Origin: Thalia democratica
Lineage: Eukaryota
Assembly: GCA_965202585.1 (NCBI GenBank)
Contig: OZ241829.1
Location: forward strand, 84,134,001 to 84,198,000
DNA: 64,000 bases
Direction: 5' to 3'
Shown piece after piece: positions 1,062-58,990 of the stretch. The position numbers were made by a program, and so were the translations under genes. How positions within the stretch are numbered: the first letter of the stretch is position 1; every line of letters begins with the position of its first letter. The notes under the pieces are model-generated. The model saw nothing but the letters and a program-made list of their open reading frames with translations, did not search any database and had not been told where the DNA came from.

Positions 1062-1730
1062 TTATCCGGTAGAATTTATTATTAACGTCGGTATCAATTT
1101 TATGTAGGTTAGATGTTTTGTCAGCTCTGACTTTAAATTTTTTAATTTGGGATTGAAATTGGATGCTACACATTTAGTTTTAAGCTTTTTCAAACTCTCA
1201 TAATAATCTTCTTTTCTTTCATTTTTTCTTTTCATTATTCTGTCCTCACCTGTAATAATATCTATAAAGATATCCAGTGGGTGGAAAGATTTTCCGTCAA
1301 AAAGGTAGAATTTACAGCGGTAGCTTTTGTAAAAATATGGTATAGAAAAAACTTTTATTGTTTGCTTCAGTAAGGATGTGCTCAATATCTAGGAAAGGCA
1401 ACTTATCTACTCCATTTTCTGCCGACATTATTGTCGATGTCTAATCTAGATCGTACTCTTTAAATGTTTTCTTGAGATATTTACTTATTTCTTTTAATAC
1501 TGAAATATCGTCAATGTAACGTCTTACAAATAGTGATTTATTTAATTTAGAAGCTTTCGTCATTATATAATGTAATGAAATATTAGCTATGACAACGGAG
1601 TTGTTATCACCTGTAATTATACCCTTCTTTTGTTTAAAATATTTTTCCTGAAAAACTAAAGTTATTGCGTTTTCTAGTAGACTTTTAGTGATACTAGGGT
1701 AAAAATTGATAGTATAGAACTTAAGTAAAT
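1062..1730 (-). mobile_element. Penelope-like element (PLE) reverse transcriptase remnant, non-Naiad type
   Basis: Manual translation of the minus strand gives KFYTINFYPSI (motif A-like, ~1690-1725), then FQEKYFKQKKGIITGDNNSVVIANISLHYIMTKASKLNKSLFVRRYIDDI (motifs B and C, ~1505-1650). ORF 1062..1385 has PLDIFI in the later palm/thumb region. Interrupted by frameshifts. Confidence 0.75.
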
Positions 1731-4493
1731 TATATTTTTCTTATTCTATGATTTTAAACCATTTTAAAACCTCGTCAGAGCTTATCCGTTGGTTAAACTC
1801 TTTTCTACTTCGTATTTGTCTGTTTATATTAACGCTTATTGTTATACTAATTACTCCTATTTCTGATCCAATCGGGTAGGGCTGTTGGAAGAAATCTAGA
1901 AATTTTTAAAACTTTTAGAATTCTGTCATAATGAAAAAAGTTGAATTGATATTTTCAACTTTTTGCAATATTTGTTACTCTTGGTGCCTTACTTTGTACA
2001 CATTTTATTCTTTTTTATTTACTGCAATCAAAACAGTCGTATCAACAATTTCTTCTTAATATCAACAATATAGTTACTTACTCGTTTTTTTATAAAACTT
2101 GATTTATACGTTCACTTATTTGTACGTCCACTTGTGGCCCTTAATTTTTGCACCCTTTCAATCTTATTCAACTCCAAAGAGAAGCTAAATCCTTATAATA
2201 TTGATATAAGGGACTTTAGTGCATAAAATATAATTGTACTTTCTGTTCCTTGTGGTAATTTCTCACATTTTCGTAAAATATCTAAAGTATAAATGATTAA
2301 AATTTTTTACAATTTTGTATATTCACTTACAAATATTGTTTTTCCATAGACTAATTTTTTAAAACTTTCATCAATAGCAGAGTTATCTTTAGCATCCTTA
2401 GACTTTTTTGGTCTGTAGGCACTAAGTTAACTGTAACAAATCTTTCAAACCGTTGATTGAACAATCATCATTTAATAGTCTTATGCAGCAGCTATAGTGG
2501 AAAACCCGTAACAGTCAGTGTTACTAACAAAATATTCAAACCTATTTTTTACCATTTAATCTTTCACGGGTTATTTTCTGAAAGTCTTCAACGGGCCACA
2601 AACAGCCTGTTTCTTCGGCAAGCTCTCTAAGGGTAGTTATAAAATTAATTTTTCTGAAAAATGTATATTACCCATCAATTTCATTAAAACTTTCAAGCTG
2701 TTTCCATTCAGAAGTTTTGAAACCTCCATTTAGGCAGTCATAAGAATTTTTATCGTTTTGGAACATGACCCGCTTATCACCAACTTTTAAAAAGTTGAAT
2801 TTTCAAAACTTTTTTTCAAATTACAAAAATCCTCATTATAATTTTTTTTTGAATCACTGAAATTTGTTGGCAATCATCACAAGGCTCGCTCGTATTTTTC
2901 TTATGAAAATAACAATTTTGATCTTTATTTTTCTCAAAACTTTTATATTTTCTGTAGAAAATTATTCGCGAAGCTTCTTTGTTGTTTTAACTTTAATGTG
3001 AGTGACCGCTTCTCTTGATAATATTTCCTTAGCGAACTGTAAGTATTTTGATGCTTAAAATACTGAGTAAAGTTAACGTTCGTTTTGTTTTTTTTACCAT
3101 AGCATTGAAAAAACAAAAACTACTTTTTCAACAAACCTCTAGTAAAAAGACTTTAGAACTGGTCTCATCTTATTTAAGAAGTCATGGGAAACTTTTATAT
3201 AATTTAACTGAAGCCTTAAAATTCTCTCAGGATAAAGTTCTAATGCTTTATTTCTACTCTCAGTAGAAATAGCATTTTAGAGTCCAGGAGTTTTGACGCT
3301 TAACAATTAACTGAACATGTTTTTTCATGAACTATACTTAAAATTAAAATATAATTCAACTGTAATAAATTTAATAACGCGAACTTGAAATATTGATATT
3401 TTTTAAGAAATCATGGTTTCTCACTAATAACTTTAGAGGCTTTGAATGAAATAAACTATCATTAATGTCTTCTTCTATTGACAAGTTAGTCTCCTTAATA
3501 AAACTTTTTGTTTTAAAATAGTTTTTCCAAAGACTTAAATTTTAAAACTCATAACTAGCACAGTTATCTTCAGCAACCTTAGCCTGAATAGTGCCGCCTT
3601 GATTTTTAAGGATGACTTTGGCTTTTCCATCTTGAAAATCTATTGATTTCAGATAAATTTCTGCTATATATATTATGTATAAATAATAGCTATAAATAAA
3701 AGGTTTGGGTTCTGTTGCATCAGGATCCGTGCGATTATGTACTTCTGCAAACTAATTCACAATATCTTGCCTAAGCTGTTTGCGTTTTATATTAAATGGA
3801 GAATTGTCTTTTTGAATGCGTTATTATCGCTGAATTTTCTATTTTTCCTTATTTTTCGCAGTTATTCCTGCTGCTTCATTCTTAATATTGTTTAATATTT
3901 AAGTTGAGCTTTTTTAATTTAAACAATAAAGCAGGTTAAATAATATTATTTGGAAAACTGACCATCTGATCAGCAATTTCAAGATATTTTTGTTTTCGCC
4001 GTTTGCTGACTCCTTTAGAACTTTTCAGTTTCACATCTTTAGAATGACTGATAAATTACCCACAACTAGTCTTGGAATTCTACCCCTTACCAAAAAGATT
4101 CTTTTTTTTTTGCCTTAAGCATTTGTTCTATTTTATTTTCTAGTAGGCTTCTCAGTATATATTTGCTCTCAGTTTGTTATTCATGAGCAACTATGACACA
4201 TGTATCTAAAAAGGTATTTTTGAAGGTTACTTATCGAAAAAATTAAAAGGTTGTTTGTTTTCAAAACCAATTAAATGTGCCATGAATCCATCTGGGCCTT
4301 TCTTTTAATTAATTCCATTTAAATTTTGGGTTTTCAAGCCAGCCCAGGTACACCATGTGATCAGGTCCACTTTCTCTATGTACACCATGTGCCTGACGTA
4401 GTAATGTTATCTTAAAACAATTTTAAAAGTAAAAGTTAAACACAAACTACAGATCTCTATGTATATGATAATTTAAACTACAGTAGTTGTAAA

Positions 4494-36448: not shown

Positions 36449-39400
36449 GGTAAAACCAGCAAAAATGCTGCGAACAAATACAATTTAAAAGCTCAAGTTG
36501 AGAACGAAGTAAGCAGTTTGATATTTTACATTTGCCTAGAATGTTTTCGTTTTAACAGTTTGTGTTTATAACTTTTTAATTTTGTAGAATGGTGAAAAGA
36601 AAAAGCTTTTGCAAAGCATATCGGAAGCTGAATTAAAGCATGAGTTAGTTTTTTTAATACTTTAGTTTTAAATGCTTTAGTCGTTGGTAAGACGAAGAGT
36701 TTTAAATTGAAGTTAAAAAGAGTGTTAGATTAAAAGTTATAAATTGGAAAAAAAACTGTGATATACAAAATTTAAATACAAACCAATTTAAATGTATAAA
36801 CTGTGTTTTTTAATAGCTAAAATCAACTTTAATTTTTATTTACCGAATTAAAGTTTAAATATATAATACCTAATTAACCCGAATTCAAAAGTTATTTCTT
36901 AAATAAAATATCTAGTAAGTTTGATTACTTTAAGTTTTTTTTTAGTGTACTCAAATTGTTATTGTTTCAGAGATAAACAAGAAACTACTAAGGAAGAAAA
37001 GGAAAATCAAATGAACTTTTTGAACATGTAACTTTACAACTTCTAGTTCACCGAATATTAAAAAACGTCTTTTTTTACAAATGTTTTTATAAATGTATAA
37101 ACCACATTGGCTTTTAAAAAAAGACAAAATAATATTGGTCAAAATGAAAACTTTACTTTTAAATTTTTAATAGGAACCTCCAAAAGGCATTGGAAGCTAT
37201 CGACTCGTTGACATCACAAGTAGAAAGTCTCAACAAAAAAACTTCAACACTTGAAGAAAAAGTAAATATAGTTTATTAATTTACAGATCAATAAAAATTA
37301 AACTAAGTATGTAATAAAAATAGTTATTTATTTATTTTTGTTGAAACTTAAACAGTTGTAAAGCTTTCAAAAAAATTTAAAATTTTGATAAACATTTGTG
37401 CTTCTTTTTAAACCGTTGTAATAAATAAAAATTTTAAAATATTACAGTTGTTGAACCAAAATGTTGCTCATCAGACAGAAGTCACGAAAATAAATAGGTA
37501 AGTAGTTTACCTTATAAATCGTTTTAACTTGATTAATTTAAAAATAGTCAGTGTTTATTTTTTTGAAATATTTGAAAAATAAACTTAAGTATAATATATT
37601 ACAGGTGTTCTTGTGCTAAAACTTTATTCCGACTAACGGCGTTTCACTGCTCTCAAATAAATTTAAGAACAGATCTACGGAGTCTATAAAATGTTAACAC
37701 ACATTAGAAAAAAAGCAGAAAAAAGCATGTATAATTATGTATAGTGTTTATCTAGGTAGTAACTATAAATGGACTTTATGGTTTAAAAACAAAGTTTGGG
37801 ATAAAAGCGTAAAATTATAAAATTGTCTACAAAAAAAAAACAAATTTAATAAAAGTAGGCACCAACCTCAAAAAGCTCTAAGAATAGGCAGGTTTTAAAA
37901 ATGAAAATTAAATTGAGTTGTGCAGAAATGTTACGTCATAATAATTTTAACAAATTATTCAATAATTTATACAGCTTGAAAACATGAAGTATTAAACTTG
38001 CAAGAATATATAAGTTTTGTGAAATAAATTAGTACATAAATAGACAGAGTTATTTAAAGTAGAATCGTCGGTTATGGGGACAGATATTCGATAAATCTTG
38101 CCGCTTATTCAGAAGTAGGTCTTTATCTTCTGCTGCAATTACTGCTCTTTCTGTATTGCAAGTTGGGCAAATTCTACTTACTCCGTTGGATGTATGTTTT
38201 ATCTTTGAAACAATACTCCACTCCATGTTTGGCCTTTTACCGTACCTGTGAAAAAAACTCCAGACATAATCCGATAAACGCGTGCTTTGTTTTTTATTTA
38301 TATTTTTAAAAGTATGTTTATGATTAGCATATCTATCCTTGAAACTACCTGCTGTACTTCCGATATAAATTTTATCTGGGCCCTTACTTTCAACTTTAAC
38401 TTTATAAATTACATTTTTAATTAAGCAATTACCTTTTAATGGGCAGTTGTCTTTGTTTAATTTACGGCAATTACATGTTTTAGGCATATTACTTAACTTA
38501 TTACTATTAGTGTTAGTTGGTTTTGAATATTTATTTATAGATTTATTGTTATGCATTTTGCTTATACTTTTAGCGCTATTGTCGCTTACTTGTTCTAAGT
38601 TTTCTTTTATCATTTTAGAAATACTTCTAGTTATACGTTGATTATTATAATCTACACTATTGTTAGTACTATTGATATCGATATTTTCATTATCATTAAT
38701 ATTAAAGTTATCATTATAGCTTATATCTTTAATGTTTAAAGTTTTAATATGTTTTACATTATTGTTACCATAATTAAAATTTTTACTATTAGGATTATTA
38801 TTATTATTACTGTTATTAAAATTATTATTATTATTATTATTATTACTGTTATTATTAATTTGATTAGTATAATTAGAAATATTGTTCATATCTACGTTAT
38901 TACTAACTTTATTACTAGAGTTATTATTTGTATTAGCTTTGATATGTCTATTTTTAAAATTTGAAATTACTGTTTTATTGTGCGATTGTATTAAAGTTTT
39001 AACATTACTCATGCAACTATAAGAAATTAATATGTATATATTCTTGCAAGTTTAATACTTCATGTTTTCAAGCTGTATAAATTATTGAATAATTTGTTAA
39101 AATTATTATGACGTAACATTTCTGCACAACTCAATTTAATTTTCATTTTTAAAACCTGCCTATTCTTAGAGCTTTTTGAGGTTGGTGCCTACTTTTATTA
39201 AATTTGTTTTTTTTTTTTTGTAGACAATTTTATAATTTTACGCTTTTATCCCAAACTTTGTTTTTAAACCATAAAGTCCATTTATAGTTACTACCTAGAT
39301 AAACACTATACATAATTATACATGCTTTTTTCTGCTTTTTTTCTAATGTGTGTTAACATTTTATAGACTCCGTAGATCTGTTCTTAAATTTATTTGAGAG

Positions 39401-42400
39401 CAGTGAAACGCCGTTAGTCGGAATAAAGTTTTAGCACAAGAACACCTGTGATATACATTCCGATAAGCTTAGCTTATCAGGATCTCCAGGATTTAACGCC
39501 TTATAACGTTACACCGTATAATATATTAATAAGTTTGAATTAAATTTGTAGTTGAAGTGTACGCTTACAAATATGGTTATTATTTTTATACGTTATGAAT
39601 ACCTACATTTTCAAAAATCTAATAATTTAAGGCTCCACAAAGAAAAGTCTAACCTACTTATCAAAAAGATTAATGAAATTGAGCAAAACAACATGACGTT
39701 GTTAGATAAAGTTAGTTGTTAACTATAAAAATCATTAAAAAAATAAAATTTTATGCATATACTTTTATAAATATTTATACGTTACTTAATTTTATTCTTA
39801 AAAAAAATTTTGATATCTTTTTTTTTATACTCATTTTCGCTATTTTAAACTTTTACACTAATCAATATAGCAAAAAGTTTTGCAAAAAGAGATTAAAGAG
39901 ACTAATGAAAAAAGCGAAGCAATGAAGCTCCAAGTAAAACAACTGAACCTCGAAAACCAAGATCTAGCAAAAGAAGTTCAGAGCTGTCAGGAAGATCTCG
40001 AAGAAAAGGAAGATGCTCTTATTGCTGCTAAGAGCGCCACCCTTGAGTTGAGTGGTGAGTAAATGTTATTAATCGTAAATTAAATGTTTCTTAATAATCA
40101 ATAAAAGTATTAGAATACTTATAGACTATTTACTTTTTAATCCCTAATATTTTTTTTTAATTTTAATGTTTAGTAGTTACAAATATTGAAAAGACGAAAA
40201 CTATATTTATAAAGTGTTTTTTAAATTGGTTAAAAATCAATTGAAGCGTAATAAAACAACAAAAGTTGCTAATTTTAAGTTAACCTTTAGTCAAGCAGCT
40301 TTACAAGTCTAAATAGAAACTGCTTTTAAATATTTTTATTGTATATGATGCTTAACTTTATCATTTTGTACTTTTCAGAACAAGTTGGTCAATTAAAAGA
40401 CCAATTGTTGTCAGGAAACGAAGAAATAAAAGTTCTTTCAGACAAAAATGAAGCTGCTTTGAAAAACATTGAACAGATTAAAAATGATTTGACCAGCACT
40501 CAGTCGAAACTAGAGCAAGAAAAAGTAAGTTTGAAAAACTCTAAAAATTACAATTTCAAATACTTTTAAAACATAAAAATGTTTAATTTTTAATTTTTAA
40601 AATATATACTGTTTTTTATAGCTTATAAGGTAGAATAACTTATTTTGAGTGTTGATTTTTAACTTTTTTTTTCAAGTTGTAAATAAACAGCACTTTATTA
40701 AACTATTAAATAAGTTTAGATTAAAAAATTGTTTATTGATATTTTTATGACTTTTTTGTGTATTCAATTTCAGAACAACTCGAAAAATAATGATACTTAA
40801 GTTCAGATGTTTCTCATCCAAATGATTAATTTTAAAATTTTAAATTAAATACCGTTCCTTTTTTTTTAAAGAAGTATATATATTTTTTCTCATTATTAAA
40901 TTTTTTTATTGGTATTATCATTGACTCCATTTATTTACCAAACTTCACGTTTGCTCTATTTGTTTCTAAAACTACGAGCCTAACCTGTTTCCGAAATCAA
41001 ATATAAGTTAAATGATATTTATGCGTTCTATTTTTCTAAGATTAGCAATATTAACAATATTTTTATAAGGTTGTTAGTATAATTCATGCTTTTATGTTTA
41101 AATACAAGGAAATAATTAATTGTTAGCTTTTTTTTGTTTAAGATCTTTTTTTTTTTTTGTTTTTAGAACTTTTTGATATTTAAATGATTACAAAAATGTA
41201 TAAAAGTAATTGTTGCTTTTAAAACGGAAAATTTGATGCTTTATAAACTTTAAATAATAAATAATAAACTCACAAACATGAGACATTTCCTATAGAATAT
41301 AGAATTGTTTTTTAAATTTTTTTTAAATCTATACAAATGCAGATACAAGACGCATATTTTTCTTTTTTACATTTAGGTTGTAAGTTATCTAAATAACTTG
41401 ATCTGTAACTTTTTTTAAGATCGAGAGAAAAAATTTGCAATACAAGCTTGATAAAACTGAAAGTATTTGCAACAAAATGACAACTGAAATTTCGTCTTTT
41501 AAAGAGAAAATTAGCGTTTGCGCTAATGAAAAAGCCGAAATTAAAAAAGAGCTTCAAAAGGTAACTAATAAGGTAAGACATTTGCACATTTTTAAAATGT
41601 TTTCATCTATTTTATATTTTTAAAACTTTGTACACTCAGTTACAAACAATAGTAAAAAATTGTAACAAAGTGCAGTAGTTGACGTTAAAAAAACTTGTAA
41701 CTACTTTAAAAATAACTAATAAACATAATAAACTAACAATTTGCTTATTTTTAAAATAACAGCTGGAGATCCAAAAAGAAGAGCTTGTTACATCTCAGCA
41801 GGAAAATGAGAGGTTTTTTTAGTTATTAAAAAATAATTTTAAAAATTAATAGTTCTTGTTCAAAAGTCCATAGATATGTTTTTACTTAAGTAGCTTTTGT
41901 TTAGCATTGTTTTAAGGTTTGTGTTGAACTCGATAAAAGTCAACTAAGTAACAAGAGTAACGTTTTTGTAGTGTTAAGGCTTAAATCATTATGTACACTT
42001 TTAATAAACTATAAAAATTAATTTTATTAATAAAATATCAGATTGAAGAAAGATGAATATAATTTAAAAAAAGCAAATGACAGCTTAAAAACAGAGCTTA
42101 TTGAAGCTAAACGACAGCTAGTAAGTTGACATGTTTTATATACAAGTGTGAGGCCTAAAAAAAAATTCATATATATATATTGTCTTTTTTAAAAGACTTT
42201 TATCTTAACTTATATAGTATAAACAAACCAAATTAATTTTATAATTATTATAGGAAAAAATTAAAAGAGCTGGATTTTTCCGTGAGTTTTTAAAATATTG
42301 TCGTTTATGTTTTACAATATACAATTTCTTAACTTTACTCATTATTTGGATATTGATAATACTAAAAACTACTTATCATAATGTAACCATTCTATTTACT

Positions 42401-57859: not shown

Positions 57860-58990
57860 ATTCTAACATATTTATATGAATATTAATTTATTCAATGGCA
57901 ACAAAGTTTCACCCAACAAAGATCTTCAGGCCTGCAAAATAAAAGATAAGACAATGAATAACTTATAATAAGTACAAAACAGTTTATATAATCATATTTA
58001 AAAAATTTACAAAAATCAGTACGTCACTTTAACATTGTTGTGCAAGTGAACAAAAAATAATTAAATAAACAAGTTTTAAAAGTAGAAATCTCTTAAGTGC
58101 AGACAAATATAAAATAGTTTTTGTCTTTTATTAAAATTTTGTTTTTTGTCAGCAAGTGATATCTCAATTTTTTCCAGGTTGCAGGTTTTACAGATCTTAC
58201 ATGCATTCTTTAAGTCTCTAATCTTATGCATTTAATTTTCCTTTTAAGTTCGTACCATTAAAATTTGTACCATTTAAGTTTATGTTGTATTTTAATTTCT
58301 ACATGTACTTAAAAAGTTATGTTCCTTTGTTATTTTTATTTCTTATGTCACTACTGTATGCGTACCATCTCTTTTTGTTAACCTGTGGATCCTATGTACT
58401 TCTTGGTTTCGTTCTGAGTAGTGATTATTGCATTGTATACCACATACTCCCACAAACACTTACTATTTTATGGGCTGGAATCTTTACTGCGGCAGTTGCA
58501 CATATTACTCTCATTATCTTTTCTTATTAATCATTTTACTTAGTACCTTTTTGTTGTGATGACTAATTAATGATTTAACATTTTCCATACAGCAGTACAA
58601 TACTTTGCACTTGTATCTGTTAATAATATTTTTTATGCTCTTCTTTTTAAAATTTTTATCAACTAGATCCAAGAACTTTTTTCCAATGTTAGTTTTAACT
58701 GATTGGCAGTATTTGAAGAACATAACTTTTCTTGAGAAAAAGTTGGGAATAACTGGTCTCATCTGATTGTCCGTTGTTGAATTTACTTCTAATATAAGTA
58801 TTAGACGCTTTTAGTCTTTCTAAAATATATTCTAATTGATTCTTTAAAACAATTGAGTTTTAAGTCACATTTTCAAAACTTTGTATTTCAAATATTAGTT
58901 TTCTGCAGATTAAATGCTTAAATGATTCTAAAAAGATTTTGAATTACAGCTTTATCAAAATTTAAAGCATACTAATGTAATATTGTTAAA
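57860..58990 (-). mobile_element. Decayed Naiad-type PLE (RT thumb/linker, GIY-YIG, 3' UTR)
   Basis: RKVMFF...VKTNIGKKFLDLVDKNF...CKVLYCCMENVKSLISHHNKKVL (58514-58762), then MCNCRSKD...CL..VVY....KKYIGSTG and C.TCNLEK with stops and frameshifts. Confidence 0.8.
57885..57945 (-). ncRNA. Minimal type I hammerhead ribozyme, canonical core
   Basis: GGC-CUGAAGA-U(short stem II)U-GAA-AC UUU GU-U-GCC, with a UUUAUU/AAUAAA extension. It lies in the 3' UTR of the Naiad remnant, the expected position. Confidence 0.7.

What the first reader, a model, noticed from the sequence alone, without database searches (positions are those of the whole stretch)
37601..39515. Endonuclease-only PLE cassette: open GIY-YIG ORF between ~410-bp inverted arms with a 12-bp TSD
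Seen: the RT is lost (truncation just before the ISYSCM linker motif), yet a 320-codon ORF stays open from an in-frame ATG. The inverted 3' UTR copy supplies a new 5' end, so the unit looks like a TIR element encoding only a nuclease. One arm has an extra 66 bp containing a hairpin (GATAAGC-TTA-GCTTATC). Known: inverted-pLTR structures arise during Penelope integration. Inference: this is probably a recent one-off insertion, but it could be a non-autonomous unit that spreads as such or supplies endonuclease in trans.
Basis: partly seen in the sequence, partly recalled or inferred. Interest (0 to 1): 0.72.

Follow-up and report, generated by a model that had tools for sequence, protein, structure and literature searches.

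The report
Truncated head-to-head Penelope-like retroelement insertion
This is one ordinary, recently inserted, broken copy of a young jumping-gene family with about 1,000 insertions in this genome; its open nuclease-only reading frame is a routine by-product of how the family inserts, not a new kind of element.

Summary
There is a 1,915-bp insert (37601-39515) flanked by a 12-13-bp duplication. Two inverted arms of 412 and 415 nt show no substitutions between them. One arm carries 66 extra bases with a hairpin. A 320-codon ORF lies on the minus strand.

The insert belongs to a young Penelope-like retroelement family. Sampled copies differ by about 1%. [quoted passage not shown] Its motifs fit the published 'Hydra' clade.

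Every simple insertion I sampled is a head-to-head dimer with 3' ends outward. Each has scattered 5' breakpoints, its own AT-rich duplication, and the extra 'tail' on exactly one end. The window copy is one point on that continuum.

- Its junction 60-mer occurs once in the 801-Mb assembly.
- Copy counts fall smoothly across the breakpoint (244 versus 213).
- About 300 arms keep the nuclease core but lack the RT core.
- Of 34 sampled RT-less arms, 30 keep an open ATG-initiated nuclease ORF. Seven give the same 318-320-aa ORF from other breakpoints.

Verdict: a dead-on-arrival one-off insertion, not an amplifying unit.

The parts
37589..37600 (.). Left copy of the target-site duplication, GTATAATATATT (a 13th base, A, is ambiguous)
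37601..38049 (-). 3' UTR of the longer (forward) copy. It ends at the inner RT start site and has no tail.
38050..39012 (-). 320-codon ORF plus stop codon. It covers the last 320 residues of the 881-aa family protein: the Asn-rich linker and the GIY-YIG nuclease.
38053..38520 (-). Cys-rich linker (CxC-X7-C-X5-C) and GIY-YIG domain. Y203, Y216, R227, H231, E288 and N302 of the ORF are all present.
39013..39028 (-). Last 16 nt of the forward copy upstream of the ATG (codons of ..ISYSC). The 5' truncation point is at 39028.
39029..39034 (.). 6-nt filler at the head-to-head joint
39035..39449 (+). Inverted second copy, holding only the last about 415 nt of the 3' UTR. It is identical to 37601-38012 apart from the length of one A/T run.
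39450..39515 (+). The 'tail': 66 nt beyond the inner start site, with a hairpin at 39462-39478. In tandem full-length copies the same sequence continues into the 5' leader of the next unit.
39516..39527 (.). Right copy of the target-site duplication

Best explanation
A single, recent, dead-on-arrival insertion of a young Penelope-like retroelement (PLE) of the 'Hydra' clade. It sits in an intron of a plus-strand coiled-coil gene, antisense to that gene.

Like every simple insertion of this family, it is a head-to-head dimer. The likely origin is two reverse-transcription reactions, primed from two nicks staggered by 12-13 bp. One started at the inner start site (no tail) and one at the outer start site 66 nt further along (tail). 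Both copied the same RNA, or RNAs from the same source, inwards, and both stopped early. One stopped after 1,428 nt and the other after about 481 nt. The two ends were joined with 6 nt of filler.

The RT part was never copied. The 320-codon ORF is open because the copy is young and the first in-frame ATG after the breakpoint happens to be Met of ..SYSCM... The unit has not been copied again.

Shown: the anatomy, the family, the uniqueness of the junction, and the continuum of breakpoints. Inferred: priming from both nicks, the lack of function, and the intron context.
For: Family and youth:
- At least 40 scored copies are 97-99% identical.
- The window copy differs from 42 others by 5-28 substitutions in about 1,420 nt (median 15) and has 3 private changes.
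- The two arms show no substitutions between them.

Architecture:
- In the six loci run through the repeat finder the arms are reported 100% complementary.
- In the 28 family loci surveyed by BLAST, all simple insertions are inverted pairs with 3' ends outward. Their 5' breakpoints scatter from reference position 1 to about 2650, and exactly one end carries the tail.
- 20 of 20 are flanked by their own AT-rich duplication. The longest shared flanking word is 13-21 nt.

No amplification:
- The 60-mer across the joint occurs once in 801 Mb at up to 3 mismatches.
- Counts of 36-40-mers along the element fall smoothly: 3' end 1,949, tail 1,236, YIG core 423, just 3' of the breakpoint 244, just 5' of it 213, RT core 116.

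The ORF is incidental:
- 34 of 55 sampled arms with the YIG core lack the RT core.
- 30 of those keep an ATG-initiated ORF of at least 150 aa with the linker and an intact C-terminus.
- 7 have the same MSNVKTLIQSHN... ORF of 318-320 aa from different breakpoints.

Identity of the protein:
- The nuclease model (pLDDT 80) aligns to the I-TevI catalytic domain with Z 9.2, rmsd 2.4 A, 92 of 94 residues. The next hits are T4 EndoII and UvrC-N.
- The full-length model's best matches are telomerase TERTs at E about 1e-7.

Literature:
- Inverted 5'-truncated copies, a tail at one end and TSDs are standard for PLEs (PMC8557442, PMC3846280).
- A purified PLE protein cleaves and extends both DNA strands and starts reverse transcription at two internal sites that delimit the tail (PMC11167929).
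Against: Transcription was not tested, so 'dead' rests on uniqueness and context, not on RNA data.

pLTRs of some PLEs carry promoter motifs readable in both directions (PMC3846280). The inverted arm could therefore drive the ORF.

The nuclease domain has all its catalytic residues, and an isolated Penelope EN domain is active in vitro (cited in PMC11167929 and PMC3846280).

The two-nick priming model is inferred from geometry. A self-priming (snap-back) route has also been proposed for PLE palindromes (PMC3846280).
Confidence: 0.88

Rival explanations
1. The cassette is a non-autonomous unit (a nuclease ORF between inverted arms) that is itself copied to new sites by the family's RT.
For: pLTR sequences alone can carry foreign cargo to new sites in trans in another PLE (PMC3846280). 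The unit keeps a complete 3' UTR.
Against: The joint 60-mer is unique in the assembly. Only the window matches the whole 1,915 bp in one piece. There is no step in copy number at the breakpoint. The ORF-bearing arm lacks the tail and everything beyond it, which is the region that holds the RT start sites in the one PLE studied in vitro (PMC11167929).
Confidence: 0.02
2. The 320-aa product is made and acts in trans as a free GIY-YIG nickase. It would either help or interfere with retrotransposition of the family or of the PLE-dependent retrozymes in this genome.
For: The ORF is intact, the catalytic residues are present and the fold is confident. Isolated Penelope EN is active in vitro (cited in PMC11167929). 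Stand-alone ENs accompany some Terminons (PMC8557442). Bidirectional promoter motifs occur in some pLTRs (PMC3846280).
Against: Nothing singles this copy out. About 300 arms genome-wide have the same content and most sampled ones are open, as expected from youth alone. The ORF is antisense to its host gene. This exact protein is in no public protein set that was searched. There are no RNA data.
Confidence: 0.07
3. Same dead insertion, but the inverted arm arose by self-priming (snap-back) of a single cDNA rather than by priming from both nicks.
For: The arms of a dimer are identical. Many dimers are near-perfect palindromes with centres of 16-51 nt. Self-priming has been proposed for PLE palindromes (PMC3846280).
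Against: A snap-back copy should end exactly where the first strand began. Instead, every simple dimer has one end with the tail and one without. The head-to-head geometry with a staggered-cut duplication follows directly from extension of both nicked strands, which was seen in vitro (PMC11167929).
Confidence: 0.2
4. The inverted structure is an assembly artefact.
For: Palindromes are prone to misassembly (noted in PMC8557442).
Against: The same geometry, each time with a distinct duplication and breakpoints, recurs at about 1,000 loci.
Confidence: 0.01

Closest known systems
'Hydra' clade of C-terminal EN+ Penelope-like elements (Craig et al. 2021, PMC8557442)
   Same: The unit is short (about 3.2 kb) with a single ORF. 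[quoted passage not shown] A CxC...C linker is present, and CxxC and CxH flank the conserved E and N. Targets are AT/(TA)n-rich. The RT is highly divergent and Pfam barely sees it.
   Different: The linker spacing here is CxC-X7-C, not X5. A linker of about 170 aa, rich in Asn, lies between RT and EN. No hammerhead was found by Rfam models, although the paper reports canonical HHRs for the clade.
Penelope (D. virilis) and Adineta vaga Pen2a-type insertions: inverted pLTR, one-sided tail and TSD (PMC3846280, PMC2377424)
   Same: An inverted 5'-truncated copy sits next to the main copy. An optional extension is present at the end of one inverted repeat only. There is a short TSD. N-rich inserts between RT and EN are also seen in A. 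vaga.
   Different: The tail here is 58-66 nt (31-40 nt there). This copy has no direct pLTR, so it lacks the partial tandem thought to be needed for normal transcription.
Two internal RT start sites and cleavage of both strands by the Anolis PLE protein (Frangieh et al. 2024, PMC11167929)
   Same: The tail equals the sequence between two start sites. Both DNA strands are cut and extended. Targets are AT-rich.
   Different: That work is in vitro on a Poseidon-clade element. Here the two sites are only inferred from genomic ends.
Twin priming of human L1 (my own knowledge, not checked here)
   Same: A second priming event from the other nicked strand gives an inverted 5' part.
   Different: L1 twin priming inverts non-overlapping parts of one RNA. 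Here the arms are duplicates of the same 3' region.

Membership tests
Penelope-like element (EN+) | Reverse transcriptase related to telomerase TERT | tested here: met
   This holds for the family, not for the window copy, which lacks the RT. The 881-aa model (pLDDT 77) has TERTs as its best Foldseek hits, at E 7e-8 to 2e-7. The RT motifs FDIVEFYPSI and YRDDG are read directly. By sequence alone the signal is very weak: RVT_1 hits 1 of 35 relatives.
Penelope-like element (EN+) | GIY-YIG endonuclease in the same ORF | tested here: met
   VIA-align gives Z 9.2 to I-TevI (1ln0), rmsd 2.4 A, 92 of 94 residues, then T4 EndoII and UvrC-N. The top Foldseek rows are all GIY-YIG enzymes but have weak E-values. 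Y, Y, R, H, E and N are conserved. Pfam finds no hit for this protein and a sub-threshold hit in one relative.
Penelope-like element (EN+) | pLTRs from partial tandems and/or inverted 5'-truncated copies, with a one-sided tail and a TSD | tested here: met
   Full-length copies are preceded by a truncated copy, the tail and a 129-nt spacer in which the ORF starts.
Penelope-like element (EN+) | Hammerhead ribozyme in the pLTR | tested here: inconclusive
   Rfam finds no hammerhead at E up to 10 in window 37000-40000 or across a tandem junction, L037:3150-4100. The 3' end does fold unusually well, with z -3.9. Another first-reader note proposes a non-canonical core there.
'Hydra' clade of PLEs | DKT instead of DKG; no CCHH in EN; CxC...C linker; CxxC and CxH around E/N; (TA)n-type targets; less than about 3 kb | tested here: met
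   The motifs are read. The TSDs are AT-rich and several lie in (TA)n. No phylogeny against Repbase Hydra families could be made, because those sequences are not held here.
TIR DNA transposon encoding a nuclease | Terminal inverted repeats of fixed sequence and length shared by all copies; spread of the unit as such | tested here: not met
   Arm length differs in every insertion, from 381 to about 2,980 nt in the sampled loci, with shorter dimers elsewhere. The arms are the retroelement's 3' UTR. The unit is unique.
Non-autonomous PLE-mobilised element | Several copies sharing the same internal structure or joint at different sites | tested here: not met
   The joint 60-mer occurs once. Only the window matches the query end to end.

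The most novel reading that the evidence does not exclude
The window copy on its own is not special, but the class it belongs to might be. About 300 RT-less arms keep the GIY-YIG core, and most sampled ones still have an open nuclease ORF. If some are transcribed, for example from bidirectional pLTR promoters, this genome could make free PLE nickase. That enzyme might assist non-coding passengers such as retrozymes, or compete with the full-length enzyme.
Probability: 0.05. Interest if true: 0.45.

Novelty: new member of a known kind. Interest (0 to 1): 0.15.

Why it matters
The finding matters mainly as a clean negative. An element that looks like a nuclease-only TIR transposon is an ordinary truncated PLE insertion.

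The family survey is a useful by-product. It covers about 1,000 head-to-head dimers, each with its own TSD and exactly one tail, with breakpoints spread over the whole element. This is genomic support for the idea that PLE proteins prime reverse transcription from both nicked strands at two alternative internal start sites (PMC11167929).

It also warns annotators that most insertions of such families are small perfect palindromes that can be mistaken for MITEs or TIR elements.

Tried and rejected
- Pfam on the 320-aa and 859/881-aa proteins gave no family.
- PDB sequence and profile searches gave only chance hits to SOD, bL19 and similar. Fold comparison was needed instead.
- Rfam found no hammerhead or any other credible family.
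- A search for an empty-site allele (flanks joined across one TSD copy) in the assembly found none, so no haplotig shows the pre-insertion state.
- An exact look-up of the 320-aa and 881-aa proteins in the 15-billion protein collection found neither.
- I asked whether the tail always sits on the shorter arm. It does not: about 16 are on the shorter arm and about 7 on the longer.
- L046 has a shorter-arm breakpoint within a few nt of the window's, but a different partner arm. With about 60 breakpoints over 3 kb, such near-coincidences are expected by chance.
A natural copy (L031:3911-6937) served as the coordinate reference.
Full report
**1. Observation**

- The repeat finder finds two overlapping inverted-repeat segments, 37595-37843/39207-39455 (249 nt, 99%) and 37831-38012/39035-39216 (182 nt, 100%).
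- A direct alignment of 37601-38012 with the reverse complement of 39035-39515 shows no substitutions. The only difference is a 3-nt change in the length of an A/T run. The right arm has 66 extra bases at its outer end.
- The insert is flanked by GTATAATATATT(A) at 37589-37600 and 39516-39527.
- The minus strand carries a 320-codon ATG-initiated ORF at 38050-39012.
- The extra 66 nt hold the hairpin GATAAGC-TTA-GCTTATC at 39462-39478, which also forms in the predicted RNA fold.
- One refinement: the forward copy matches the family only up to 39028 and the inverted arm starts at 39035, so 39029-39034 is 6 nt of filler.

**2. What the element is**

The assembly (801 Mb; the window is C5:84134001-84198000) holds many copies 97-99% identical to the insert.

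A complete ORF of 881-887 aa is found in copies that lie in partial tandem. The order is truncated copy, tail, 129-nt spacer in which the ORF begins, then the full copy. That protein reads ...TVKISYSCMSNVKTL... at residues about 556-570. The window ORF is therefore its last 320 residues, cut a few codons before the conserved K[IV]SYSC motif.

Sequence libraries barely recognise the protein.
- Pfam gives nothing for it.
- Among 35 relatives, one hits RVT_1 and one hits GIY-YIG, below threshold.

Fold comparison is clear.
- An AlphaFold model of the C-terminal 156 aa (pLDDT 80) aligns to the I-TevI catalytic domain with Z 9.2, rmsd 2.4 A and 92 of 94 residues. T4 EndoII and UvrC N-domains follow (Foldseek ranks the same enzymes first).
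- The 881-aa model (pLDDT 77) has telomerase TERTs as best matches at E about 1e-7. Residues 595-736, the Asn-rich linker, are predicted disordered.

A telomerase-like RT with a C-terminal GIY-YIG domain defines an EN+ Penelope-like element. The finer motifs match the 'Hydra' clade of Craig et al. 2021 (PMC8557442; read):
- ADKT instead of DKG;
- an N-terminal RW[R/K];
- no CCHH;
- a CxC...C linker;
- AT/(TA)n targets;
- a unit of about 3 kb.

Rfam found no hammerhead in the window copy or across a tandem junction, so that feature is left open.

**3. How the family inserts**

I surveyed 28 further family loci and the window region itself against one natural copy used as a ruler.
- Every simple insertion is a pair of copies head to head, with 3' ends outward.
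- In the six loci run through the repeat finder the arms are reported 100% complementary.
- The 5' breakpoints of the two arms are independent and scattered over the whole element, from reference position 1 to about 2650.
- The inner joints show 0-14 nt of overlap or 1-41 nt of filler.
- Exactly one outer end carries the 58-66-nt tail.
- 20 of 20 dimers have their own AT-rich duplication. The longest shared flanking word is 13-21 nt.

Genome-wide counts at up to 3 mismatches give 1,949 3'-UTR ends and 1,236 tails. That implies roughly 1,000 insertions, many of them palindromes only 130-300 bp across.

This is the arrangement described for PLEs: an inverted 5'-truncated copy and a tail at only one end (PMC8557442, PMC3846280). 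The geometry follows directly if both staggered nicks prime reverse transcription inwards. Frangieh et al. 2024 showed that a PLE protein cuts and extends both strands, and that it starts at two internal RNA sites that delimit the tail (PMC11167929). That this mechanism produced these dimers is my inference. A self-priming route (PMC3846280) fits less well, because it predicts identical outer ends.

**4. Is the window cassette special?**

No.
- The 60-mer across its joint occurs once in the assembly at up to 3 mismatches. Only the window matches the 1,915 bp in one piece.
- Counts of short words along the element decline smoothly towards the 5' end: 423 at the YIG core, 244 just 3' of the window breakpoint, 213 just 5' of it, and 116 at the RT catalytic core. 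There is no step that an amplifying nuclease-only unit would leave.
- About 300 arms (423 minus 116) keep the nuclease core but lack the RT core.
- Of 55 sampled arms with the YIG core, 34 lack the RT core. Thirty of those still have an ATG-initiated ORF of at least 150 aa with the linker and an intact C-terminus. Seven give the same MSNVKTLIQSHN... ORF of 318-320 aa from other breakpoints, because that Met is simply the next in-frame ATG.
- The copy is an average member of the family. It differs from other copies by 5-28 substitutions per about 1,420 nt (median 15) and has three private changes.

**5. Context**

The insert lies about 100 bp downstream of an exon-like segment with AG and GT boundaries (about 37454-37497). 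It lies upstream of plus-strand coiled-coil ORFs at 39880-40062, 40339-40569 and 41435-41623. It therefore probably sits in an intron, with the nuclease ORF antisense to the host gene. This is read from the sequence and is not a gene model.

The ORF-bearing arm has no direct upstream pLTR, which is the arrangement thought to be needed for PLE transcription (PMC2377424). Some pLTRs do carry motifs readable in both directions (PMC3846280), so transcription from the inverted arm cannot be excluded.

**6. What could not be done**

- No empty-site allele is present in the assembly.
- Neither the 320-aa nor the 881-aa protein is in the public protein collection as an exact sequence.

**7. Verdict**

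The amplifying-unit alternative is rejected for this assembly, and trans-acting nuclease is untested and unlikely for this copy in particular. It is a new member of a known kind and of low interest in itself.

Two earlier notes of this scan bear on it. One proposes a non-canonical hammerhead in the same 3' UTR. The other describes head-to-head PLE insertions elsewhere in this genome, which agrees with the family survey here.

Noticed in passing
window 39340-39450 (and the mirror copy at 37601-37710): The sense 3' end of the element folds into a three-way junction far more stable than shuffles (-45.2 kcal/mol, z -3.9). It has GAAAC and GUC elements in hammerhead-like positions but a non-canonical CCGUAGA box. 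Rfam hammerhead models do not score it.
   Followed up: partly
L037:3630-3816, L032:4058-4244, L044:4436-4622: In full-length tandem copies the tail is followed by a conserved 129-nt spacer in which the 881-aa ORF starts (MLNPKKKSIFEV). The 'tail' is therefore simply the start of the next unit's 5' leader.
   Followed up: yes
genome-wide, for example G000:C1:32999851-33000049 and C2:9526413-9526584: Many insertions of this family are tiny head-to-head palindromes, with 130-300 bp between the two 3'-end words. They could be mistaken for MITEs or hairpin genes.
   Followed up: partly
window 1630-1866 (-) and 58523-58732 (-): Two older fragments of other PLE families are present. They are 36% and 48% identical at protein level to residues 230-309 and 512-584 of the 881-aa protein. 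The second covers the SYSC linker region.
   Followed up: no
window 37454-37497, 39880-40062, 40339-40569, 41435-41623 (+): These are exon-like coiled-coil ORFs of a plus-strand host gene. The insert appears to sit in one of its introns, antisense.
   Followed up: no
L032 (G000:C8:38570500-38580499), L050 (G000:C4:23899400-23906500): These are complex arrays in which a dimer with tails on both ends abuts a full-length copy. They are probably insertions into, or next to, earlier copies, or longer tandem templates.
   Followed up: no
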